Assembly: GCF_021869535.1 (NCBI RefSeq)
Contig: NW_026262604.1
Location: forward strand, 46,004,001 to 46,068,000
Length of the DNA stretch: 64,000 nt
Reading direction: 5' to 3'
Source: Mytilus californianus
Lineage: Eukaryota
Below the pieces are notes generated by a model. That model did no database searches. It worked only from the letters and a program-made list of their open reading frames with translations, and had not been told where the DNA came from. Below, piece after piece: positions 11,806 through 44,900 of the stretch. The translations under genes were made by a program, and so were the position numbers. How positions within the stretch are numbered: position 1 is the stretch's first letter; each line of letters starts with the position of its first letter.

Positions 11806-12940
11806 TGTGTTCTATGTTATGGTGAGGTTGAAGAGTTACCGAATGTCGTTATCACAATCACGTCCTCTTTTTTTCCGAATATGACCTACCAAATAAGACA
11901 TATCTGGGCAGACCGAATCAAGCAAAAAGCATGTTTAACCCCGACAAATTGGTCGTTGTTTTTTTTTTTATCATTTTTACTGTCTCACATTTTTGTCATC
12001 CCATGGCCTTTGATAGCTTAAAATATAGACGGGGTTTGTTTATTTTTGAAAATCGTACAATTACCTGTAGTTATTCGTACCCTGCGTATTTGTTGCTTAA
12101 TCGAAGTTGGTCTATTTCGCAATTATACTATATCTCTATTTGTATACTAATTATTCTATACGACTACAAACGTGTTCCTCCAAACTTGATTGTTATGAAG
12201 GGCCGTTCGGGTCATAAAAAATGTTTTTGTTTTGTTACACGTACGCTAGAGGTACGCGTAACAGATCGTTCATGTACCCTAAAGTTACACGTAAGACGTT
12301 GTTCACGTACCCTACAGATACACGTAACACTTTGTTAACGCACCCTACAGTTACGCGTAACTATTTGTTCACGTAGCCTAAAACTACACGTAACTGTAGG
12401 GTGCGTTAACAAAGTGTTACGTGTATCTGTAGGGTACGTGAACAACGTGTTACGTGTAACTTTAGGGTACATGAACGATCTGTTACGTGTACCTCTAGCG
12501 TACGTGTAACAAAACAAAAACATTTTTTATGACCCGAACGGCCCTTCATAACAATCAAACGTGTTTGGAGGAACACGTTTGTAGTCGTATAGAATAATTA
12601 GTATACAAATAGAGATATAGTATAATTGCGAAATAGACCAACTTCGATTAAGCAACAAATACGCAGGGTACGAATAACTACAGGTAATTGTACGATTTTC
12701 AAAAATAAACAAACCCCGTCTATATTTTAAACTATCAAAGGCCATGGGATGACAAAAATGTGAGACAGTAAAAATGATAAAAAAAAACAACGACCAATTT
12801 GTCGGGGTTAAACATGCTTTTTGCTTGATTGGGTCTGCCCAGATATGTCTTATTTGGTAGGTCATATTCGGAAAAAAAGAGGACGTGATTGTGATAACGA
12901 CATTCGGTAACTCTTCAACCTCACCATAACATAGAACACA
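11806..12940. repeat. Long inverted repeat (fold-back): two ~555-bp arms, ~98% identical, ~25-bp loop
   Basis: 11806-~12359 is the reverse complement of ~12385-12940. The ORF track gives the same peptide on opposite strands (11931+ and 12527-). Confidence 0.95.
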
Positions 12941-13435
12941 ACACCTATGCTGAATAACCTTTATTCCCTATGCACAATGAACTCGTCTGCTGGAGAATAC
13001 TATTTGACCAATCAAATCAGGCCTTTTTTACAACATTTTAAAAGAACGATGCAAGTACATTTTTAAATAATGTAAAACGAAATTTTAATGGCTGCGTTTG
13101 AGAGGTTTTGTATGCAGATTACGTTAGTGACGAAAAGTTATCATGTGTCATTTTTATTCTGTGACTAATACAGATTTGAACCTTAATGATCGGTTAATTT
13201 TGCGAAATTTGAATTGATTGGATAAAGAAATGATGTTGACACAGATAATCCATTATTCAGGGAAAGGGATGACAGGTTTTCTGTTGCTGTTAGCTGCACA
13301 AATAAACAGCTACGCGTATCTCCAGGGTACGTGAACAGACAGGTACGCGTACCTCCAGGGTGCGTGAACAAACTGTTACGCGCACCTCTAGCGTACGTGT
13401 AAGAAAATGATTTATGACCCGTACGGCCCTTCATA
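12194..13435. mobile_element. Non-autonomous DNA transposon, probable IS3EU type, with ~30-bp subterminal repeats
   Basis: TIRs TATGAAGGGCCGTTCGGGTCATAAA / TTTATGACCCGTACGGCCCTTCATA, flanked by GATTGT (12188-12193) and GAATGT (13436-13441). Paralogous empty sites read TTGATTGTTGTGCATG (e.g. ~37149, ~52864). TAY..RTA ends with a 6-bp TSD are the IS3EU signature. Confidence 0.6.
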
Positions 13436-15494
13436 GAATGTTGTGCATGTTAACATTATTCGTAAGTTATGATAATTTGACCAGTTTGTCATCAAGAAAT
13501 AGACATCATGCAGTCAACATTATCAAGGCCAGGTGAAGTTGTATGAATAAAATCGTGATTTCATAGCGGATTTGCGTTGTAGAAAAACAGAACAAGTTCA
13601 AATTAACTAGGATAAATCTATTCTAAATATATAATACAATTTGTTTCATGAGTCAGTTTTCACCTGCTTGAAAAATAAAATAAAATGTATAATTACAATG
13701 GAAACAAGGGTGCCTTTTGATTTATCCAGTGTTCGACCAATCAGTTAATATCATAGTGTTTTAAATGGGTGTTTCTATTGATCCTGTATTACGTTCAGGT
13801 ACAAGTATTGGGTCGAGGTAAGCTGTAGTGGCACCTTCATTAACAAATAACTTAAAATAATCACCAAAAACTAACTGAAGATGAACATGACCGTAAGAAG
13901 ACTCATGCAGAATCAAAATGAACTATTTGGGTTAATTATCATTTTAATTCAAGGAATGTCGAATTATCCTTAGAAGTAATATTATGCGATGAATTATCCT
14001 TTTATTTGCCTGGTAAATAACTCCTTATTGTCTTTTGAGCCTTATCGACTTTTACACATTATCTCCCGTCAAAATGACGTCACTGACGTATGTAAACAAA
14101 ATGGCAACGGCCAGGTGAGAAGTCCATGGACTAGAGTGACGAAGAAACAAGTATTTGAAATCCATCTGGTACCAAGGATAGCTTTCATAAAATGCGCTTT
14201 TCAGAGCCATCATTTGTTATATATATGAGGCATTTTAAGTCACAAAACAATTCTCTGACGTAAGTGTTTTGACAATTTGTTCCTACAGTAAGACATGTAC
14301 AAGAGTGTCTTTAACATTTATGTTCAATGAACGAAAGGCCCTTTGGCATATTTTGAGCGTGACAAATGAACTGATTCCTCGAAAAACCAATTGCCGTCCT
14401 TTAATAGGTAATTGATTAATCTTGGTTTTACTACAATTTATCGAGTAAAAGAGTTAAAAAAGATAAAATTAATGCGGATTTCATCAAGTGCACTCAACTG
14501 TCAATAAGAGAGGTACAACATAATGAGAATCTATGCTACTAAGTAATGCATGTCGATGATTGTAGACGAAGGACGTTAAATTATTCATGGCTTACAAGAC
14601 TTAGTGTTATATATAATCTTACAAACAAGCATGTGTGAAGGCTGACAAGTCTCGTATATATAAAGATGAATCTTAAAACAATTTACACCTATCATATTTG
14701 CTTTAGTTCATGTTGTAGACTCTTCTCCTAATGGCTTCTCAAGTTAATGGTTCGAATGTGGTCTTCGAAGAAGGGATTGCTAATTTTTCCAACTCCTTGT
14801 ATAGCAAACTAGACAGAGCTGGAAATGAATTCATTTCGCCATACAGTATCACGTCAGCATTGTAACTCCTGATGCTTGGAACTGGCAAAACGACTGAAAA
14901 CCAGATAAAGTCGGTAATTTTTGAATATGAAGAACCAAATGATATCAACCAGGGATATAAACTTCTTAATGATGAACTCTTAACGAGAACAACATCGGGA
15001 GTTGCATTGTCTATTGCAAACAGGTTATACGGCAGTAAGAGTCTAAATCTTTTGAACTATTTTTCTTCGAAAGCGTCTTCATACTATGGCAGTAATGTTG
15101 AATTATTAGATTTAGTATCGGAGGCGGAGAAATGACGATTGACAATAAATGATTGGATTTCCACAAATACAAACAATCTAATAAAAGATATGATTCCGAG
15201 AAATGTTCTTTGTTCAAACACACTATTAGTAATACCAAATGCTATGTATTTATAAAGGTTACTCGGGAACACGTGTATTTGTTTACTTTTAACACGTGTG
15301 TTTAAATCAAAACATGTTTATGTTTAATTTGATTGGACCATCAGTAAGTTATTACCGGTTTAAGTTATATCAATCATGATAACTTCATGCTAGAATTTTA
15401 GCGCTAAAATTATAATAAGATATCTAGAATTGTCATTCGAGGTTCGCCTATCCGACAGAAAGGTTCGTTTTTTCTTAAATCGCCACTTGGTAAA

Positions 15495-16271
15495 ATGTCC
15501 GAATCTTCTCCACGTCTGGAATTGAATGAAGACATACTACTCGAAGGAGATAATAGTTTACCGCCACCTAATATTCATAAAGCAGCTGATAAGTCGTCTG
15601 ATTTGGTAGATACTGTAGAGCTTTTTAAGACAATTTTAGACAGCAAGTTAGGTGAGTTGAAATCTGAACTCATACAAGAACAAGATTGCCTTAAGAGAAA
15701 AATTAAGGAGGACGTCACTCTAAAATTTAAGGGGGAAGGAAACAGAATTCAGTACACCTTTAACGAGGAATTATTAGACACTGTTAATAAACTTTCAAAA
15801 TTCATCCCTAACTCCAATACTCAAGCCTATAGATTAGTTCTTGACATAACTGATAAGATCAAAAGCCGTAATAAGAAAATACGCATAGCTGATGCTTCCC
15901 CTGCTGGTTGGGGAACCGTTAGGGAATACGAATCCAATGCCGTGGCTTCAGATTCTGAAGATGAGAGAAAGATACGACAAGCTGAGACCAGAGCTATCCG
16001 TACCTCCAAGGAGAAGTCAAAATCTCGCCAGCAACCTTACCCAAAAAATCCGCCTCGTCAACAACCTGCGGAATCTTATGGTAACCCTGCTTACGCTCAG
16101 CATTATCAACGTAATCAGCAACAGCCCTTTCGTGGGAGCTTCGCAAGGCGTGAGCCTTGCTCAATCGACACGTGCCACTACTGCAAGCAACAAGGCCACT
16201 GGAGAAAAAACTGTCCTCTTCTCGCCAGTCTCAGGTCATCCAACAGCAACTCCACAACCTACCAGAAGTAG
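15495..16271 (+). CDS. gag: Gag-like protein (258 aa) with CCHC zinc knuckle
   Basis: CHYCKQQGHWRKNC, plus the ADASPAGWGTVREYE...DSEDERKIR block typical of DIRS-group gag. Confidence 0.9.
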   Translation: MSESSPRLELNEDILLEGDNSLPPPNIHKAADKSSDLVDTVELFKTILDSKLGELKSELIQEQDCLKRKIKEDVTLKFKGEGNRIQYTFNEELLDTVNKLSKFIPNSNTQAYRLVLDITDKIKSRNKKIRIADASPAGWGTVREYESNAVASDSEDERKIRQAETRAIRTSKEKSKSRQQPYPKNPPRQQPAESYGNPAYAQHYQRNQQQPFRGSFARREPCSIDTCHYCKQQGHWRKNCPLLASLRSSNSNSTTYQK

Positions 16272-18327
16272 TAAAGTAGGGCCTGAACGTCACTCTCCAG
16301 TCATTGTGAATGATAAGTATTTAGACACTATTAATGACCAATTTTCTACATGTTTTGTTGATAACGATTATATAGAATCTTTTTTAGATCAAGTTCAATA
16401 TTTTGAAAATTGTCAGTCATATGATAAATTTAAAGGGGTGAAAGGTAGATTAGCTTGTCATGTAAAGTATTGGGAAAATATAGGTGCTTGTCCTTTTGTG
16501 CTTGATACAATAAAAAATGGTTATGTTATTCCATTTATAGATACACCTTTTAAAATGTACCACAGAAATAATAGATCAGCACGGCAGAATACTGAATTTG
16601 TCACAAAGTCAATTGAAGATTTAGTTCAAATAGGTTGCGTAATTAAAGTGCCTTTTCAACCATATGTGGTAAATCCATTGAGTGTTGCTACTCAAAAGTC
16701 CGGTAAGAAACGACTTATTTTAGATATGAGTCAATTGAATAAACACATAAAGCGCGAAAAAATAAAATTTGAGGATTGGAAGTTAGCTATACAATATTTT
16801 GACAAAGATATGTATCTGTTTAAGTTTGATTTAAAATCTGGTTATTTTCACTTAGACATATGCTCACAGCAACAGACTTTCTTAGGTTTTCAGTGGGAAG
16901 GTCAATTTTATTGCTATACTGTTTTAGCTTTCGGAATTACTACCGGTCCGTACATTTTTACTAAATGTTTGAGGCCACTAGTAAAATTTTGGCGTGGAAA
17001 CGGTATAAAAGTTGTTTTGTATTTAGATGATGGATTTGGCATGAGTCCAGATGAAAATACATGTAATGAGCAATCGTCCTTCGTAAAAAGGTCTTTGATT
17101 GATGCTGGTTTCCTTATTAACGAGGAGAAGTCTGTTTTTAAACCTGTTACCGAGTTAGAATGGTTGGGAATAGTTTGGAACTCGAAAGAATACAAATTAT
17201 CTATTACTCAACGTCGAGTTGACGATTTGATTTTCTCATTGAATGTAATTTTGGCTAAATTTCCCTATGTTACAGCTAGATCTTTAGCTCAGGTTGTAGG
17301 TAGAATTATTTCTATGACTCCCGTAATCGGAAATGTGGCTAGAATTATGTCAAAGTTCTGTTACATGGAAATTGAAAGTAGAATTGGGTGGGATATTCTC
17401 ATTACAGGGTACAAACCCGTCGAGGTTTTATCAGAGTTAAAGTTCTGGTTAGAAAATGTCACCATGATTAACTATCGTAATTTATGTCATTACAGTAAAT
17501 CTTCTGTTGTCATATACTCAGATGCTAGTAATATTGCCGCTGGTGCATACACCGTTGAATTAGAAAATAAGATTTTCCATAAGATGTGGACATGTAGTGA
17601 AACGGTACAAAGCTCCACATGGAGAGAGCTGAAAGCTATAGAGTTGGCCCTTTTTTCTTTTAAGAATAGTTTCACAGGAAAAACTATAAAGTGGTTTACT
17701 GACAATCAAAATTGTGTCAAAATTGTTAATTCGGGAAGTATGAAAGAAAATCTTCATGTTATAGCAAAATCTATTTTTTCATTTTGCATTCAAAAAGGAA
17801 TATCAATTGACATTCAATGGATTCCCAGAAAAGAAAATGAAAAGGCTGATTACATCAGCAAAATGGTTGATTTCGAGGACTGGGGAGTCACACATATATT
17901 TTTCAATTTTTTAAATGATATGTGGGGTCCTTATTCGATTGACAGGTTTGCAAGTGTCGAAAATAGAAAAGTTATGAGATTTAACTCCTTATTTTGGCAA
18001 CCTGATTCTGAAGCAGTTGATGCATTTTCTCAAGTTTGGACCAATGAAAATAATTGGCTAGTTCCACCAATTAATCTTGTGATACGATCGATTAAACACA
18101 TTATAGCTTGTAAAGCTCGAGGCACGTTAGTTGTGCCTAAGTGGATTTCTGCTGCATTCTGGCCTTTGATATTCGATAAACATCTGATTTATCAAGATTA
18201 CGTAAAAGATGTTATTGTGTTTAAAAATACTGATGGTATTTATAAGCAAGGTTCGAATAAGAATACGATATTCGGAATTGAACCGTTTGGTTCGCCAGTT
18301 TTGGCTGTTTTGCTAGATGCATCTTAG
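15892..18327 (+). CDS. pol: Reverse transcriptase / RNase H / Dam-like methyltransferase polyprotein (811 aa; true start uncertain)
   Basis: RT motifs KKRLILD, FDLKSGYFH, LAFGITTGP and YLDD (17020). RNase H motifs YSDAS, WRELKAI, FTDNQN and QWIPRKENEKAD. MT-like tail IDRFAS..N...RFNS...AVDAF..W.....LVPP...LVVPKW...FWP. It overlaps gag by 380 nt in another frame. Confidence 0.93.
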   Translation: MLPLLVGEPLGNTNPMPWLQILKMRERYDKLRPELSVPPRRSQNLASNLTQKIRLVNNLRNLMVTLLTLSIINVISNSPFVGASQGVSLAQSTRATTASNKATGEKTVLFSPVSGHPTATPQPTRSSKVGPERHSPVIVNDKYLDTINDQFSTCFVDNDYIESFLDQVQYFENCQSYDKFKGVKGRLACHVKYWENIGACPFVLDTIKNGYVIPFIDTPFKMYHRNNRSARQNTEFVTKSIEDLVQIGCVIKVPFQPYVVNPLSVATQKSGKKRLILDMSQLNKHIKREKIKFEDWKLAIQYFDKDMYLFKFDLKSGYFHLDICSQQQTFLGFQWEGQFYCYTVLAFGITTGPYIFTKCLRPLVKFWRGNGIKVVLYLDDGFGMSPDENTCNEQSSFVKRSLIDAGFLINEEKSVFKPVTELEWLGIVWNSKEYKLSITQRRVDDLIFSLNVILAKFPYVTARSLAQVVGRIISMTPVIGNVARIMSKFCYMEIESRIGWDILITGYKPVEVLSELKFWLENVTMINYRNLCHYSKSSVVIYSDASNIAAGAYTVELENKIFHKMWTCSETVQSSTWRELKAIELALFSFKNSFTGKTIKWFTDNQNCVKIVNSGSMKENLHVIAKSIFSFCIQKGISIDIQWIPRKENEKADYISKMVDFEDWGVTHIFFNFLNDMWGPYSIDRFASVENRKVMRFNSLFWQPDSEAVDAFSQVWTNENNWLVPPINLVIRSIKHIIACKARGTLVVPKWISAAFWPLIFDKHLIYQDYVKDVIVFKNTDGIYKQGSNKNTIFGIEPFGSPVLAVLLDAS

Positions 18328-18635
18328 ACATGGCCCTAATATATATAGATATATTTTAGCAGGCATGGTCTGTTTGTGACATGGCCCTAATATATATATA
18401 GATATATTGTAGCAGTCATGGTCTGTTTGTGACATGGCCCTAGTATATGTATATTGTAGCAGGCATGGGTGTTTATGTTGACATGGCCCTAGTATCGGTA
18501 ATGATATTGTAGCAGGCTTGGTTTTTTATTTGACATGGCCCTAGTATCTATAATGATATTTTAGCAGGCATGGTAATTTGTTTTACAGTTTATGGCCCTA
18601 GTATCTATAAAGATATTGTAGCTGGCGTTGAAATA
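18328..18635. repeat. Six ~50-bp tandem units (ACATGGCCCTA..GATATTKTAGCAGGCATGG) between pol and YR
   Basis: Units start at about 18328, 18380, 18432, 18481, 18533 and 18591. Two conserved boxes alternate with variable AT-rich linkers. Confidence 0.85.
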
Positions 18636-18740
18636 TTTGAATATATATTATATTTTACTGTGTATAGAAATCTGAAATATGCTAATAATTCGTCCTCTGT
18701 ATATGTATATAAAATGTTATTGCAATTTTACGTTTTTCAG

Positions 18741-19756
18741 ATATTTTTTCAGTAGGACATTGGTCAGACTTTAATTCACAAGTTGCCTCTAATAATGATC
18801 TCAGCAGTTTGTTCAAACAGTTACCAGAATTCCTTCTTTCGTCCAAGGCTGCGAGTACTCAGAAGAAATATAGATATGCCTTCAATTCATGGTGTAAGTG
18901 GACTAGTCAATATTCTTTTTCACCATTGCCAGCATCTCATTTACATATTTCTTTATATTTAATTCATTTGTCTGAAACTGCAAAATCGGTTTCAAAATTA
19001 AATGATGCTTTTTACGCCATAAAATGGGCACATAAATTAGCTGGCGTTGCTGATCCCAGTGAAAATAATCTAGTTGCATCTGTTCTTGAAGGGGCTCATA
19101 GAAAAATAGGTCATTCAGTTGTCAAAAAAGAACCTATCACACCGCATATTTTGAAAAATATTGTATGTAAATATGCTAATAATACTTGTAATTTAAAAGA
19201 TGTAAGAATAGCATGTATGTGTTTATTAGCCTATGCTGGCTTTTTAAGATTCTCCGAGTTAGCTAACTTGAGAAGGTCTGATATACAGTTTTCCCCTACT
19301 TACCTTACACTTCATTTAGTCAAGAGTAAAACTGATGTATATAGGGAAGGGAAAGATGTTGTCATTTCAAAAACAGGGAATATTACATGCCCGGTAGATG
19401 TACTTCAGCGTTATCTAAAGTTAGCTAACATTCCTGAAGAATCGAATGATTTTATTTTTAGATCTATTTGTTATTGTAAATCTTTGAATATATACAAACT
19501 TAGAAAGAGTAGTCATATTTCTTACACCAGAGCCAGAGAGTTATTGTTATCTGCACTTGACAGTTTAGGTCTTGATAAAAAACAGTTTGGCTTACATAGT
19601 TTGAGGTCAGGAGGAGCTACTGCCGCGGCAGAAGCTGGAATAGATGACCGGTTGTTTAAGAAACACGGGAGATGGAAAAGTGATAAAGCCAAAGATGGTT
19701 ATGTTAAAGAGAGTATACTCAACAGATTGTCAGTATCTAAGAATTTAGGATTGTAA
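18741..19756 (+). CDS. Tyrosine recombinase (YR) of the retroelement; probably a spliced 3' exon
   Basis: The frame is open from 18713 to 19756 and carries LRFSEL, HSLRSGGA and GRWKSDKAKDGY (R-H-R-Y tetrad). There is no in-frame ATG before ...ACMCLL. The track start at 18809 is TTG. A TTTTTCAG acceptor ends at 18740. Confidence 0.9.
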
Positions 19757-22700
19757 TTTATATTGTTTGTCCCCCCTTTTTCTTTATGTCCCTTTCTTTA
19801 TCAATCGAAGCTTTCTGTGCTGTCGGGGCGAGCTGATAACCAAAAACTGTGTTGAGTTTTTACTTTGTAAATGCTTTATGTTCGTTTGAAGTATTGAATA
19901 AGAACATAAATGTATTTATAAAGGTTACTCGGGAACACGTGTATTTGTTTACTTTTAACACGTGTGTTTAAATCAAAACATGTTTATGTTTAATTTGATT
20001 GGACCATCAGTAAGTTATTACCGGTTTAAGTTATATCAATCATGATAACTTCATGCTAGAATTTTAGCGCTAAAATTATAATAAGATATCTAGAATTGTC
20101 ATTCGAGGTTCGCCTATCCGACAGAAAGGTTCGTTTTCCCACCCACCCACCCCTTTTATTAAGACTTCATAGGAATGTGAATCAGTATGTTATGTAGAAA
20201 ATAGTTGATAAAATACATGTATGTAAATCGAAATGATTTTTTCTTCAACTTATAGAACATTTTTCTATTGTAGATTGTGTTTATATGTGATGGCAGCGGT
20301 CGATGACAGCAAATTGGACATTTGTTTATTGTTTATAATAAAAATAAGCTTTCTGTGCTGTCGGGGCGAGCTGATAACCAAAAACTGTGTTGAGTTTTTA
20401 CTTTGTAAATGCTTTATGTTCGTTTGAAGTATTGAATAAGAACATAAATTTATTTTAAAGGCACATGGAAAAAAGAATTTAACGCAAATGGCACTTCACA
20501 AAGGAACTTTTTCGTGAGAGCGAACGAGCAAAAACTAGTTCAAATGATGTACGGTGAATTTGATGTAAAGTCTGGTGAAGACCTTACACTTGACTGCAAA
20601 CTTTTACAACTGCCATATCAAGGAAACAAGGTCTCTATGATCATTGTTTGGCAAAATTCTGGTGATGAACTCTCCGAACTAGAAAGTAAATTTACTTCGG
20701 ATAATTTCAAGACTCTTGTAAGCGGCATGAAGACACAAAAGACAATAGTACGAATTCCTAAATTTACAATGAAAAGCGAGTACGATTAAAAGCCAATTTG
20801 TACAGCGTTAGGAATAACGGAAATCTTTGACAAAAAATGCTGACTTTAGTGAAATGCTAAAAGCTGATGTTACACGCGTGCACGTTACTGATGCTCGTCA
20901 TAAAGCTTATCTTGAAGTGAACGAAGAGGGGAGCGAAGCAGCAGCCGCTACTTTGTTATCTGTATCATTTACTTCAGCAAGGATTCCTGAGCCCCAGCCA
21001 TTCCAATTTGTTGCCGATCATCCTTTCTTGTTTGTGATTCAAGATGACAAAACAGGAATACCGCTGTTCATTGGAAGGTATGCCAGGCCATAATTTCACA
21101 GTAACATATTTTTGAATGAAAACAAATGCGTACTGATCAAAATTAATTAGAACCTGTTATATATTAATCAAGTACTTGACTTTACGCAAAGATTTTTACG
21201 AAAGTGTATACATATCTGTCTTAATATACACATTGTGCACATGTAGGTTTTTATACCTATCTGTGTGGATACACACCTTGGTTTTTGTATAACTAAATAC
21301 TTTATATTTGAATAATTTTGGATATTTTTGTAATGATCTGTCTGTAAATAAACACTAATAAAAAGTTAGTTTGTGGTTTCAAATCTTTAGTAAAACATAA
21401 ATGTTGCTTTTCCTTGAAGTTTGTTTTATTTGATTTTTTTCTCATAATGTTTGTTTGCTTTCTCAGTATCATAAGCATCAAAAGCCGTGGTCCTGTTTTG
21501 TATGGAATTATGTTTAATGTGCCATATATCTATTGATATAGGTTGATACATGGATAGAAAATCAGATCTACGATATCCTTTTTGAATACCCTGCGATGGC
21601 CATGCGTCCACATCGTAAGACAACCTAAGTTTCTATTTAGATTGTGATAATTTCAAAGGAGACAAGCAATATTAGAAGGAAAATTGAATTAAAATAGACG
21701 GCAACCATGCCATGACAGCATGTTATAAATAATAAACAGGAGGCAGCAAGAAAATTTTGGGAAATATGGGGCTTTATTGTCCTGAATATTGCAAAAAGCA
21801 CTGAGAGCAGCAGGGTGAAATATGTTTTGAAGATTTTATGCCACAATCTTATTTTTTAGATCAAAATAGGCATACTCTGTTTATGTCCGAAGTTATTCTA
21901 CCACTTGGTGTTTAAAATGATATGGATTTTTAACCTTCTTTATCTACATCACTAGAACAAACTCAAACAGGAGTTACAAACACAGCTAGCGCATCAGATT
22001 TATCGCGACAAAATTTTTCTTTGACATGAAATTTTATTATACAATAGTAAATGGATTTAAGTCTTAAATGGTAAATTTTATGTTAACAACATCTGAAAAG
22101 TCTGAATAATGAATTACTCAGTCATATTCAGTCGTTCGGTCAATTTGTAGAAGACATGTCGACAGCAGTTAATTTAGTACTGCTCATAAAATGCTTGCAG
22201 TCAATTCAGTATTTTGTAAATGTGTACATTTAAATCACAATTACTGAACCATCTGAACATAGACTGAACATATCTTAAGTGACAGCACGCAAATTGTCTG
22301 AACAGTAGTGAAATAACTGCAGTGCATCCGTCTGAAAATTGAACTAAATGATTGACAATTATTTCATAAAAGATAGGCGAAAGATACCAAATGGACATTC
22401 AAACTAATAAGTTGAAAATAAACTGATAACGCCATGGCAAAAAAGGGAAAAAAAGACCAAAAGACAAACAACAGTACACAAAACACACTACGAATTTTAT
22501 TTTTCGGTCTTTTAAGAACTGTTTATATCACGCTTACTGTTTCAGATAAGATTGGACTACTAGTGGCTATATTATGTAATACGTCTACGCATCTTCACAT
22601 GAATAATGAAAAAAATACCAACTGAAACGATTTCACAATATCAATACGACAGTAAGATTTATTTAGCAAACTGAAAAGATACTTACACATTATTTTCTTT

Positions 22701-25238: not shown

Positions 25239-26399
25239 ATGGCTTCTCAGGTTAATGGATCGAATGTGGTCTTCGAAGAAGGGATTGCTAATTTTTCCAA
25301 CTCCTTGTATAGCAATCTAGACAGAACTGGAAATGAATTCATTTCGCCATACAGTATCACGTCAGCATTGTTACTCCTTATGCTTGGAACTAGCAAAACA
25401 ACTAAAAACCAGATGAAGTCGGTAATATTCGAATATGAAGAACCAAATGATATCAACCAGGGATATAAACTTCTAAATGATGAACTCTTAACGAGAACAA
25501 CATCGGGAGTTACATTATCTATTGCAAACAGGTTATACGGCAGTAAACGTCTAAATGTTTTGAACACTTTTTCTACGAAAGCGTCTACATACTATGGTAG
25601 TGCTATTGAACTTTTGGATTTTGTGTCGCAGGCGGAAAAATCACGACTGACAATAAATGATTGGATTTCAAACAATACAAACAACCGAATTAAAAATATG
25701 ATTCCAAAAGGTGTTCTTAATGCAAATACTTTATTTGTAGTAGTAAACGCTATATATTTTAAAGGTATGTGGAAAACAGAGTTCAACAGGAATAACACTA
25801 CACAAAGGAACTTTTTCGTGAGAGCGAATGATCAAAAGCTGGTTAATATGATGTACGGTGAGTTTGATGCAATGTCTGGTGAAGATCTTTCACTTGACTG
25901 TAAGGTTTTGCAACTACCGTATAAAGGAAACAAGATCTCTATGATCTTTGTTTTGCCAAATTCTGGTGATGGACTCTCGGAACTAGAAAATAAACTTTCC
26001 GTGGATAATTTCAAGACACTTGTAAGCGGTCTGAAGACACAGAAGACAATAATAAGAATTCCCAAATTTACAATGACAAGCGAGTACGATTTAAAGCCAA
26101 TTTGTACGGCGTTAGGTTTTACGGAAATCTTTGACGAAAAAATTGCAGACTTTAGTGAAATATTCCTAGCTAATGAAACACGCGTGCGCGTGACTGATGC
26201 ACGTCATAAAGCTTACATTGAAGTGAACGAAGAGGGAAGCGAAGCAGCAGCTGCTACTACAATTACTATTGGAGTGACTTCAATACAGGATCCTAAACCC
26301 CAGCCATTTGAGTTTGTTGCTGATCATCCCTTCCTGTTTGTGATTCAAGATGACGAAACAGGAATACCGCTGTTCATTGGAAGATATGCCAGGCCATAG
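25239..26399 (+). CDS. Intact intronless serpin B (386 aa, intracellular/leukocyte-elastase-inhibitor-like)
   Basis: Motifs ISPYSITSAL, NAIYFKG.W, LPY.G, IPKF, hinge EVNEEGSEAAAAT and signature [13 protein letters not shown]. No signal peptide. RCL TITIGVT-SIQD. Confidence 0.95.
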   Translation: MASQVNGSNVVFEEGIANFSNSLYSNLDRTGNEFISPYSITSALLLLMLGTSKTTKNQMKSVIFEYEEPNDINQGYKLLNDELLTRTTSGVTLSIANRLYGSKRLNVLNTFSTKASTYYGSAIELLDFVSQAEKSRLTINDWISNNTNNRIKNMIPKGVLNANTLFVVVNAIYFKGMWKTEFNRNNTTQRNFFVRANDQKLVNMMYGEFDAMSGEDLSLDCKVLQLPYKGNKISMIFVLPNSGDGLSELENKLSVDNFKTLVSGLKTQKTIIRIPKFTMTSEYDLKPICTALGFTEIFDEKIADFSEIFLANETRVRVTDARHKAYIEVNEEGSEAAAATTITIGVTSIQDPKPQPFEFVADHPFLFVIQDDETGIPLFIGRYARP

Positions 26400-41963: not shown

Positions 41964-44900
41964 AATTTGGAATTTCGTAAGCAGACGAAGTGTGCGAAAT
42001 GGAATTCTAATTTTATGAATAACCGAAACAAGATATGAAAGTGTTATCTCTGGTTGCGCACGCAGCCTGGCTAGCCAATCCCTACGATAATGCATGTTCC
42101 ACATGCGTTTCCTCATTCTCTTACTGAAGAGCGTCGAGTAAAGAAAAAACAGAATTTGATTGAAAAATCAAACCATAAGCTTAACAAAATCAATAGGAAT
42201 AAACTTCAGGAAACGACTGAAAATACAACCCCATTAAAGAACACATGTCTTTTTGGTCTAATTTATATTATACCACATTTTCAATTATGTACTTTTGTTG
42301 ATTTTATAAACCTGTTAACATTGTGTATTTCTTTTGTTTATTTTATAAACCTGTTAACATTGTGTATTTCTTTTGTTTTTTTTGTGTTATCTATTTTAGA
42401 ACATTAAAACAAAAATACTCTAAACAAATTAAAACATTTAATATCATTTATTATAATCCTGGTCCAATCTTGGTCATCATTTTTACTCTTGTCTAAGAAA
42501 TACTTCTTGGACTGTTCAGAATTCATCCCTGTTCTCTGGTTCTACTTCCCAGACCTGCAAAATACAAATATATATTTGTGAAAAGTGAATACTGAGTATA
42601 TCCAGTAAATAAAATAGAATAAACCATAAAATTGAATGTGAATAAAGGCGAAGGAAGGAGGGAACACTTTCATATCTTGTTTCGGTTATTCATAAAATTA
42701 GAATTCCATTTCGCACACTTCGTGTGCTTATAAAATTCCAAATTTCATATCATAACCTCAACAAGATAATCCAATGTTAGTTTAAAGCTTACCTAGTAAG
42801 TACTGCTTGTTGAAAATTATTGGATACTATCGGTTTACAGTAGATCTATTACATCTTGTGTTGATAATTCAACGCGTTTTGCCTTTGAAGTAGAGGATGA
42901 ACGTGTTGAATGACCAGTAAAAAGGGACGAGAAACCATATTTGTTTATTGTCTCTTTTAACCACCTTGCAACTGATAAAGGAACTATATGATGATGAGGT
43001 TTCACAACACTTAAAAGGAGCAATGATCTATCAATATTATCTCCTTGTTTTCTCCATTATTGTGTGCTAGACAAATAGTCATTAATGCAAGTAACAACAC
43101 ATAAACTCCTTTCAGTAGGGAAAAAGTTGAAAGCTATTGATTTAGTTTAAGAACTAGGACGACAAGTTTTGGTTAGTTTTGGTAACTCAAACAATGTTTG
43201 TAAACCTTGTTGTTTAATATATTTACAATTTAACATGCCTATTTCAGATGCTCTACCTGCTGAAGATAGAGCCAACAACGTCATATTTTTGACGTTGGTG
43301 TCCTCTCATTAAAAATGGCTCTCATATGTCTAATTATAAGATGATGTTTACCTACTTGTAAACTATCAATTAATAGATGGTTCTTTGAAATTGCAGACCT
43401 ATAAGTATTTATTGTTCTATATTGTAAACCATTTTTGAACAATGTTGTGAGAAATTCAATTACAGTGGCCAAAGTGGCCTGAAAAAGATTAACTGATTGT
43501 TCACTACACCAGCTGACCCATTTTCCCCAGGAGCTCTTGTAAGAAAGATGGATTCCTGGTCTCAATGTTTTTTCATGCAACTTTGCAGCTGCTTTTGGTA
43601 GTCCCTCTGTAGGACTTCGTCCCCTGAAATTGTCCATGCCGCAAGATTGACATACCTTGTTTGAGTCAGTGGGTGTGGTTCCCCCTGGGGTGACATCAAA
43701 AGATTTGGAAATTTTGGTATTTTTATTGGATCTTGTATTAACATTTCCAATAACATTGGACACCATGGTTGTGCTTGCCATGCAGGGGCTATTACTAATA
43801 ATGTTGCCTTGTTCTTCCTGGCTTTGGAAAGACAGTGAGGAGTATGTCGTCTAGATATATGATCATACGAACACCCATCCTTTGCAATATACCTACTACT
43901 GGTTTCATTATTTTGGTCAATCTTGGACCCTCTGCTAGCCCGAAGGGTAGAGCTGTGTACTCGAACAGGGTTCCTTCCCATTTGAACCTCAGAAATGTAT
44001 TTTGACTGATTGACAGAAATGAATATGCCTCCTTTTGGTCTATTTTTAGCATGTAATCGCCCAGTTTTAGCAGGTCTTTGATCATGAACAAGCTTTCCAT
44101 TTGAAACGTTGGTACATTACATTTTGGTTTAATTGTTTTAAGTTTAATACTTGTATTTGATCTCCATCTTTTTTGGGTACTAAGAACCAATTGCTTAGGA
44201 ATTGATCCCTGCATGGTTTTACTGGTACAATGACTCTTTTTGTCAACATTTCTCTGACCTCTGTTGACATCTTGTGTTTTTCTTTTTGATTGAGTACTGT
44301 CATTCATGGATCTTTCAGTTGTATCGGACGTGACTGAAAACATTTTGGATATCTTTTTATATCTTTTAGTCTGAGCTGATTATTTCCCAGTTCTTTACAA
44401 AATGTTTTAACCGTCCTGCTATAGGAAAGTGTTTTGATAATGTCACTAGGTTTAGTGAATGACTCGGATGCCTTGACTTTTTCTTGATAAGATTCCTTTT
44501 GTTCCCATTGTTGTCTTTGTTGCACCTGACGAGGTGTGTCTTAGTTGACCACCTTCTTCTTGTGACTTTTTTCTTTCCTCCACCGAGAGCTAATGCCATT
44601 TCGGAAACTTCTTTCTTTATTTTGCTCCATTCCTTCAGCTCTTCCTTGAACCCACTTCCAAACAGATGCTTGTCATTTTACGCTAAACATTCCTGTTTGT
44701 CTTTTAGTAGTGACATAGCCTTCTTTGAATCTTGATTGTTTATTCTTTGAAGGATTGACAAATGTCGCTGATAATTAATTGCAACATTAGATTGTCCTAT
44801 TAAACAAATTGTTTTCTCTAACAGATCAAGAATATGACGGAAGTCAACATTGTCAACAATCGCCTGCGCAATAGAATCGTAACACCCCTTATCGATTTTT

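What the first reader, a model, noticed from the sequence alone, without database searches (positions are those of the whole stretch)
15238..15260. The retroelement inserted at a serpin site that mimics its own circle junction
Seen: the element's B/A junction is cataaAT|GTATTTATAAAGG. The reconstructed empty site is gctAT|TTATTTTAAAGG (A-I-Y-F-K-G, matching the intact paralogues). Crossover is confined to the shared AT, yet the next 12-13 nt match the element end at 11 positions with one gap. Inference: the YR recognises an att-like half-site. Because NAIYFKG is among the most conserved serpin motifs, every copy in the array offers a similar target, which would give multi-copy-gene targeting by an att mimic.
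Basis: partly seen in the sequence, partly recalled or inferred. Interest (0 to 1): 0.7.

Follow-up and report, generated by a model that had tools for sequence, protein, structure and literature searches.

The report
Retrotransposon prefers weak junction-like target sites
A young jumping gene in a mussel genome sits in a dead serpin gene copy at a spot resembling the element's own joined ends, but across about 90 copies that resemblance is weak and only about 10 bases long, so it does not aim the element at serpin genes.

Summary
The element (window 15244-20447, 5204 bp, split direct repeats A1...B1A2B2) interrupts serpin copy A exactly at N-A-I-Y-F-K-G. Contigs from four public runs join 15243 directly to 20448 with a 2-letter ambiguity, so the reconstructed empty site exists as an allele.

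I collected about 93 right flanks and 89 left flanks of this 99.5-99.96% identical family.
- Targets resemble the B1/A2 junction core AA|ATGTATTT only from -2 to +8. Mean matches at +1..+8 were 3.7 (first set) and 3.4 (second set) against 2.5 at random. The two-class estimate is about 1 bit in all.
- Positions +9..+15 (ATAAAGG, the F-K-G codons) show no enrichment (2.1 and 2.0 against 2.0).
- The "shared AT" is element sequence. All left ends read AT-GTATTT, but only about 24% of right flanks start with AT. Four paralogous empty sites show a clean insertion with no duplication and no obligatory shared bases.
- Only this copy lies in a serpin. None of the other roughly 40 serpin matches is occupied, and the hit copy is already a pseudogene.
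- Sites matching as well occur at about 1 in 6,000 positions.

Serpin targeting is therefore not supported. What remains is a weak junction-like core preference.

The parts
14734..15243 (+). 5' part of serpin copy A (residues about 2-174), ending ...AAT GCT; pseudogene with two in-frame stops in this part
   Evidence: tblastn with paralogue B, 83% identity, stops shown
15244..20447 (+). PAT-like tyrosine-recombinase retrotransposon, 5204 bp, from ATGTATTT to GAACATAA, inserted without target duplication
   Evidence: Boundaries are constant in 38 copies. Paralogous empty sites agree. Empty-allele contigs skip exactly 5204 bases. The other 37 copies are 99.5-99.96% identical.
15244..15471 (+). 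Repeat A1
   Evidence: 228/228 identical to A2
15495..16271 (+). gag-like ORF with a CCHC zinc knuckle
   Evidence: Pfam PF00098, E=1.8e-4, over the cut-off
15892..18327 (+). pol ORF: reverse transcriptase, RNase H-like part, C-terminal Dam-like methyltransferase part
   Evidence: RVT_1 E=3.4e-16. RNase H and Dam hits are below the cut-off. Atlas feature search of residues 630-811 gives Dam clusters at 0.96.
18809..19756 (+). Tyrosine recombinase ORF with the R, H-x-x-R and H...Y motifs present
   Evidence: PF00589 E=3.7e-13, over the cut-off; motifs LRFSE, HSLRSGG and HGRW...DGY read in the translation
19808..19909 (+). Repeat B1
   Evidence: 102/102 identical to B2
19905..19925 (+). B1/A2 junction CATAA|ATGTATTTATAAAGG, the internal copy of the presumed circle junction; contains the short palindrome ACAT-AA-ATGT
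   Evidence: Read directly; present exactly in 50 places of the genome
19910..20137 (+). Repeat A2
20346..20447 (+). Repeat B2, right end of the element
20448..20462 (+). Right flank ATTTATTTTAAAGGC (I-Y-F-K-G), matching ATGTATTT at 7 of 8 positions; the further TAAAGG match is best read as chance
20448..21093 (+). 3' part of serpin copy A, with one in-frame stop and a frameshift near 20833-20840
   Evidence: tblastn in two frames
25746..25765 (+). Unoccupied equivalent site in intact paralogue B (AACGCTATATATTTTAAAGG). Its prefix score is 11, higher than the occupied site.

Best explanation
A very young, still polymorphic PAT-like tyrosine-recombinase retrotransposon inserted into a serpin pseudogene copy. 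It integrates by recombination between its joined ends (the sequence kept internally as B1/A2, ...CATAA|ATGTATTT...) and a chromosomal site. The exchange point on the element is fixed between CATAA and ATGT. No target bases are duplicated or lost, and no identical di- or trinucleotide is required. The recombinase, or the strand-swapping step, favours targets that resemble a 10-bp junction core (AA|ATGTATTT; informative positions -2, -1, +2, +3, +5 to +8). This preference is worth only about 1-2 bits. AT-rich I-Y-F codons (ATT TAT TTT) happen to fit this core at 7 of 8 positions. The additional match over the K-G codons is coincidence, and the serpin hit is incidental. Shown: the boundaries, the empty sites, the logo and its limits, and the absence of other serpin hits. 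Inferred: that the tyrosine recombinase and a junction-bearing intermediate carry out the reaction.
For: Boundaries: all 38 full copies begin AT-GTATTT and end GAACATAA, while the next bases vary. Removing exactly that stretch restores paralogous uninterrupted sequence without a gap at L012, L022, L030, L035 and L036 and the empty allele of the window copy.

Core mimicry, first set (37 copies without the window copy): +1..+8 matches to ATGTATTT average 3.73 against 2.53 at random (0 of 20,000 resamples). -8..-1 matches to the B end average 3.19 against 2.35 (p about 5e-5).

Core mimicry, second set (55 further right flanks printed, counted by hand): 3.42 against 2.53 (z about 5). Combined: +8 T 62%, +7 T 56%, +5 A 52%, +2 T 46%, +3 G 26%, -2 A 63%, -1 A 53%, against a background of A .35, T .33, G .16.

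Contiguous microhomology at the exchange point averages 2.39 against 0.99. Only 34% of copies have 3 or more bases and 4 of 38 have none.

No distal signal: +9..+15 gives 2.11 and 2.02 against 2.02 (hand count). The offset-tolerant test gives 4.70 against 4.68, p=0.49.

No serpin bias: the 41 serpin matches coincide with no other element end. The serpin site is at the 94th percentile of the matrix, and its paralogues at the 64th-96th.

The recombinase ORF has its catalytic motifs. Copies are 99.5-99.96% alike, and A1=A2 and B1=B2 in the window copy.
Against: The window site is the best junction mimic among the 38 copies scored by script. One other flank, counted by hand, also matches far (C110:54414461, GATTTATAAAG, score 9). 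So a small contribution of distal positions in rare good sites is not excluded. Given the core preference I estimate about 0.13 sites at score 10 or more and about 0.45 at 9 or more among the roughly 93 flanks, with 1 and 2 observed. That is suggestive but not significant.

The second set was tallied by hand from printed matches, and up to about 3 of its ends may be chance matches to the 16-mer (controls).

Without a second family having a different junction, a fixed structural preference (a T-tract at +6..+8) cannot be told apart from true mimicry.

Fixed copies have passed selection, so the logo may not equal the integration preference.
Confidence: 0.75

Rival explanations
1. One reading: the recombinase reads a 12-13 nt att-like half-site (GTATTTATAAAGG). 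The conserved NAIYFKG codons copy it, so the whole serpin array is a preferred multi-copy target.
For: The window site matches at 11 of 13 positions with one gap and has the top anchored score of the 38 copies scored by script. Every paralogue carries a similar site. One further flank matches through +14 (C110:54414461).
Against: +9..+15 is at the random level in two sets, 92 flanks in all (hand count), and so is the offset-tolerant test. One of about 93 insertions is in a serpin, and the other serpin matches are all unoccupied, including paralogue B whose site scores higher. A look-alike site at C24:63.91 Mb is not a serpin. About 1 in 6,000 positions matches as well. The hit copy is a pseudogene.
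Confidence: 0.04
2. Pure chance: the element inserts without sequence preference, and every resemblance to the junction reflects AT-rich DNA.
For: The genome is 67% A+T. The information content is small (about 1-2 bits). Four of 38 copies have no microhomology at all.
Against: The controls were random positions from the same loci, so local composition is matched. Enrichment is position-specific and was replicated in a second set (hand count). Anchored scores of 7 or more occur in 4 of 38 sites against 0.5% of random positions.
Confidence: 0.03
3. The preference is real but is not mimicry. The integration machinery favours a structural feature (A-A step, then a T-tract 6-8 bp downstream, as in bent or easily melted DNA) that only happens to coincide with the junction sequence.
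For: The strongest positions are A/T runs (-2 A, +7 T, +8 T). Low-specificity bacterial integrases such as that of Tn916 prefer bent AT-rich DNA (my own knowledge, not tested here).
Against: Eight of eight informative positions agree with the junction base, including the G at +3 (26% against 16%). Both flanks match the correct side of the junction, as expected for a crossover with a junction-like partner.
Confidence: 0.15

Closest known systems
PAT-like elements of the DIRS order (PAT, Kangaroo, TOC and relatives), as described in PMC3266345
   Same: Split direct repeats A1...B1A2B2. Order gag, then RT/RNase H with a Dam-like methyltransferase tail, then tyrosine recombinase. No target duplication.
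   Different: Membership by RT phylogeny was not tested. The methyltransferase part is only weakly detected by Pfam, though it is supported by the Atlas feature search.
Three-base circle-junction model for DIRS1-like elements (Poulter and Goodwin 2005, as summarised in PMC3266345 and PMC7192593)
   Same: Integration looks like recombination between the joined ends and the chromosome, without duplication. Bases next to the exchange point tend to be shared.
   Different: Here identity is a tendency, not a rule: 3 or more shared bases in 34% of copies and none in 4 of 38. The element is not flanked by the same trinucleotide at both ends. The resemblance reaches +8, beyond three bases.
Ngaro elements (for example those of Cafeteria, PMC8547959)
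   Same: Split direct repeats. Solo A-B units left by recombination: at least 15 here of about 0.5 kb, from the coordinates.
   Different: Ngaro elements lack the methyltransferase part. The Cafeteria Ngaros are thought to choose their targets through ORF1, and no junction-like logo has been reported for them.
Secondary attachment sites of bacterial tyrosine integrases, and Crypton or Starship direct repeats (PMC13465315)
   Same: Targets are degenerate copies of the element's own core site, and microhomology is favoured at the crossover.
   Different: Those systems usually need identity in a 2-8 bp overlap, which then flanks the element on both sides. Here no shared overlap is seen, and the exchange point is a single position.

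Membership tests
DIRS-order tyrosine-recombinase retrotransposon | Reverse transcriptase domain | tested here: met
   PF00078 E=3.4e-16, 60 bits against a cut-off of 29.6
DIRS-order tyrosine-recombinase retrotransposon | Tyrosine recombinase with the R-H-R-Y catalytic residues instead of a DDE integrase | tested here: met
   PF00589 E=3.7e-13, over the cut-off. LRFSE, HSLRSGG and HGRW...DGY are read in the translation. Catalysis itself was not tested.
DIRS-order tyrosine-recombinase retrotransposon | Insertion without target-site duplication | tested here: met
   Gap-free paralogous empty sites at L012, L022, L030, L035 and L036; empty allele of the window copy. L023 shows 4 extra bases that remain unexplained.
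PAT-like superfamily | Split direct repeats A1...B1A2B2 | tested here: met
   A1=A2 228/228 and B1=B2 102/102, with B1 abutting A2
PAT-like superfamily | Methyltransferase domain after RNase H | tested here: inconclusive
   Pfam Dam E=0.0027, 17.8 bits, below the cut-off of 28.1. Atlas features give Dam clusters at 0.96. No match among solved structures.
PAT-like superfamily | RT groups with PAT-like references in a tree | not tested
   No reference sequences were fetched.
DIRS1-like superfamily | Inverted terminal repeats plus an internal complementary region | tested here: not met
   The terminal repeats are direct. No terminal inverted repeat was reported for 15244-20447.
Ngaro superfamily | No methyltransferase domain | tested here: inconclusive
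   A Dam-like tail is probably present.
Three-base identity integration model | The same trinucleotide at both ends of the element and once in the target | tested here: not met
   The left end is always AT, while the right flank starts with AT in about 24% of copies. Contiguous microhomology of 3 or more bases occurs in 34% of copies.
Site-specific (att-type) integration into one gene family | A long, information-rich target and repeated hits in the family | tested here: not met
   About 1-2 bits of information (the two-class figure is a hand count). One of about 93 insertions lies in a serpin, and the other serpin matches are empty.
Serpin (the interrupted gene) | Serpin domain | tested here: met
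   Paralogue B gives PF00079 E=5.8e-108. Copy A aligns to it at 77-83% identity but carries 3 stops and a frameshift.

The most novel reading that the evidence does not exclude
The element integrates through a single-point exchange. Both junctions map to the same phosphodiester of the circle junction (CATAA^ATGT). No overlap is shared, and no copy among the 38 checked at both ends, nor among the roughly 93 right ends, carries the reciprocal arrangement that a heteroduplex overlap would give. This fits one pair of strand exchanges followed by replication or repair, as in integron cassettes or the CTX phage, perhaps from the single-stranded cDNA seen for DIRS-1 (PMC7192593). A roughly 10-bp junction-like core would serve only as a weak guide. 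It would replace the three-base identity model for split-repeat elements.
Probability: 0.25. Interest if true: 0.6.

Novelty: new member of a known kind. Interest (0 to 1): 0.38.

Why it matters
How tyrosine-recombinase retrotransposons choose their targets is hardly studied; PMC7192593 notes that the recombinase's specificity has not been investigated experimentally. This family is young (99.5-99.96% identity), polymorphic and present in many copies. That makes it a good natural data set. It shows that targets resemble both sides of the element's joined ends, which supports a junction-bearing intermediate. It also shows that identity at the crossover is not required and that the preference is far too weak to target a gene family. 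For the serpin array the insertion is an incidental, probably neutral hit in a dead copy.

Tried and rejected
1. A possible second serpin hit. The copy at C24:63.91 Mb has flanks GAAATGCCAT and TTGAATTTATTTTAGAGGT, which read N-A-I...I-Y-F-R-G. I fetched 1.5 kb on each side (L046, L047). tblastn with the serpin found nothing on either side, and the genome-wide serpin search has no match there. Rejected as a local look-alike.

2. A distal motif with variable spacing (ATAAAGGTT anywhere from +5 to +21): no enrichment.

3. Enrichment of A at +1 and at -7 in the first set was not repeated in the second set (hand count), so both were dropped.

4. End joining of a linear copy with microhomology was rejected. 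That mechanism predicts likeness between the end of the left flank and the start of the element, plus small target deletions. What is seen is likeness between the right flank and the element's start, and gap-free empty sites.

5. Covariation with other families could not be done.

6. A search of solved structures with the methyltransferase tail found nothing.

8. The 55+51 extra flanks were not typed into a script. They were counted by hand from the printed matches.

Full report
WHAT IS THERE. The window comes from a 1.65-Gb, 33% G+C animal genome; earlier notes of this scan call it a mussel. Between 15244 and 20447 lies a 5204-bp retroelement with split direct repeats. A1 is 15244-15471, B1 is 19808-19909 and abuts A2 at 19910-20137, and B2 is 20346-20447. 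A1=A2 at 228/228 and B1=B2 at 102/102. It encodes a gag-like protein with a zinc knuckle. It also encodes a pol with reverse transcriptase, a weak RNase H signal and a weak Dam-like methyltransferase signal, and a tyrosine recombinase with its catalytic motifs. This is the architecture of PAT-like members of the DIRS order (PMC3266345). The element splits serpin copy A (14734-15243 and 20448-21093). Five further serpin copies lie in the window.

THE OBSERVATION.
- The B1/A2 junction is CATAA|ATGTATTTATAAAGG.
- The left junction is gct|ATGTATTT.
- The right junction is CATAA|ATTTATTTTAAAGGC.
- The joined flanks read N-A-I-Y-F-K-G, as in paralogue B.
Contigs of four public runs from three studies join 15243 directly to 20448, skipping 5204 bases, with two letters that fit either side. 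The empty site therefore exists as an allele, and the insertion is polymorphic.

OTHER COPIES. The B1/A2 junction occurs exactly 50 times in the genome. I fetched 37 other full copies with both flanks. They are 99.5-99.96% identical to the window copy. They gave 55 further right flanks and 51 further left flanks. Many of these belong to solo A-B units of about 0.5 kb. I counted these extra flanks by hand from the printed rows.

BOUNDARIES. In all 38 full copies the left end reads AT-GTATTT and the right end reads GAACATAA, while the next bases vary. Right flanks start with AT in 12 of 38 and 10 of 55 copies. Reconstructed empty sites, with ATGTATTT...CATAA removed, align without a gap at the junction to uninterrupted paralogous repeats. 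This holds at L012, L022, L030 and L035, whose right flanks do not start with AT, and at L036 (100% over 80 nt). The AT is therefore element sequence. The insertion duplicates and deletes nothing, and no shared dinucleotide is needed. L023 has four extra bases at the junction compared with its satellite paralogues, which remains unexplained.

TARGET LOGO. Controls were random positions in the distal flanks of the same loci.
- First set without the window copy: the right flank matches ATGTATTT at +1..+8 in 3.73 positions on average against 2.53 (0 of 20,000 resamples).
- First set: the left flank matches the B end at -8..-1 in 3.19 positions against 2.35 (p about 5e-5).
- Second set (55 right flanks): 3.42 (z about 5).
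- Combined frequencies: -2 A 63%, -1 A 53%, +2 T 46%, +3 G 26%, +5 A 52%, +6 T 43%, +7 T 56%, +8 T 62%. The background is A .35, T .33, G .16.
Every informative position carries the junction's own base. A two-class estimate puts the total at about 1 bit. Positions +9..+15 (ATAAAGG) give 2.11 and 2.02 matches against 2.02 at random (hand count). An offset-tolerant search for ATAAAGGTT gives 4.70 against 4.68 (p=0.49). Contiguous microhomology at the exchange point averages 2.39 against 0.99. It reaches three bases in only 34% of copies and is absent in 4 of 38.

THE SERPIN QUESTION. A genome-wide search with paralogue B found 41 serpin matches on five contigs. None coincides with any other element end. 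A matrix built from the other 37 sites scores the serpin A site at the 94th percentile of random positions, and the paralogues' sites at the 64th-96th. In the rest of the window, 19 of 117,320 positions reach the anchored score of the occupied site. These include the unoccupied site of paralogue B (score 11) and non-serpin sites up to 13. By extrapolation that means several hundred thousand such sites in the genome. Given the core preference, I estimate about 0.13 sites as good as this one among the roughly 93 flanks, so one such site is unremarkable. Copy A also has three in-frame stops and a frameshift that are independent of the insertion. A look-alike site at C24:63.91 Mb proved not to be a serpin.

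MECHANISM. The right flank resembles the element's start and the left flank resembles its end. This is what a crossover between a junction-bearing intermediate and a junction-like target produces. End joining of a linear copy would not produce it. This supports the circle-junction model proposed for DIRS-order elements (PMC3266345, PMC7192593). The three-base identity rule of that model is not met here. Both junctions map to one position of the junction sequence, and no copy shows the reciprocal arrangement expected from a heteroduplex overlap. That leaves room for a single strand exchange resolved by replication. This last point is inference only.

VERDICT. Its extension to 13 nt and to serpin-array targeting is not supported. 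The decisive missing test is whether target logos of other families follow their own junctions. I could not run it because no more genome letters could be fetched.

Noticed in passing
window 14734-15243 and 20448-21093: The interrupted serpin copy A has three in-frame stop codons and a frameshift near 20833-20840. It was, or has become, a pseudogene independently of the insertion.
   Followed up: partly
window 11806-12940: Nested long inverted repeats (arms of 162-232 nt, 98-99% complementary) form a large foldback structure. A 33-nt tandem repeat lies nearby at 12361-12547 and 13287-13440.
   Followed up: no
window 18315-18628: About six tandem units of about 52 nt (GACATGGCCCTA...TAGCAGGCATGG) lie inside the element, between the pol and recombinase frames.
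   Followed up: no
window 43846-44055 (minus strand): A short reverse-transcriptase fragment, 42% identical to the element's pol, from another retroelement.
   Followed up: no
G000 C24:63911500-63918417 (L046, L047): This copy of the element is about 6.9 kb long and has two recombinase matches 1712 bp apart, which indicates an internal tandem duplication. Its target site resembles the serpin site (AAATGCcAT / ATTTATTTTAgAGG), yet no serpin homology was found in 1.5 kb on either side.
   Followed up: yes
G000, e.g. C46:18169131-18169668, C143:22680925-22681462, C1:74707256-74707771: At least 15 solo A-B units of about 0.5 kb, the length from A2 to B2. They are comparable to solo LTRs and to the isolated AB repeats reported for Cafeteria Ngaros (PMC8547959).
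   Followed up: partly
G000 C13:32985087, C24:54342247, C110:71209331, C132:69905493: Four places share ...ACGATTGTCTGTT directly before ATGTATTTATAAAGGT. This is probably another repeat family, or a non-autonomous relative, that carries the same A start. They were left out of the flank counts.
   Followed up: no
L023 (G000 C110:58803323-58809532): This copy sits in a satellite-like repeat. Its reconstructed empty site has four extra bases (AAAG) at the junction compared with five neighbouring repeat units. It is the only case that is not a clean insertion.
   Followed up: partly
G000, whole genome: There are 1167 candidate tyrosine-recombinase domain loci. They include other families with open frames of 343, 384 and 405 residues, so several recombinase-bearing element families coexist.
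   Followed up: no
window 17399 and 17853: At these two positions all element contigs of four public runs read C and T where the window copy has T and C. These are private substitutions of this copy against the family majority.
   Followed up: no
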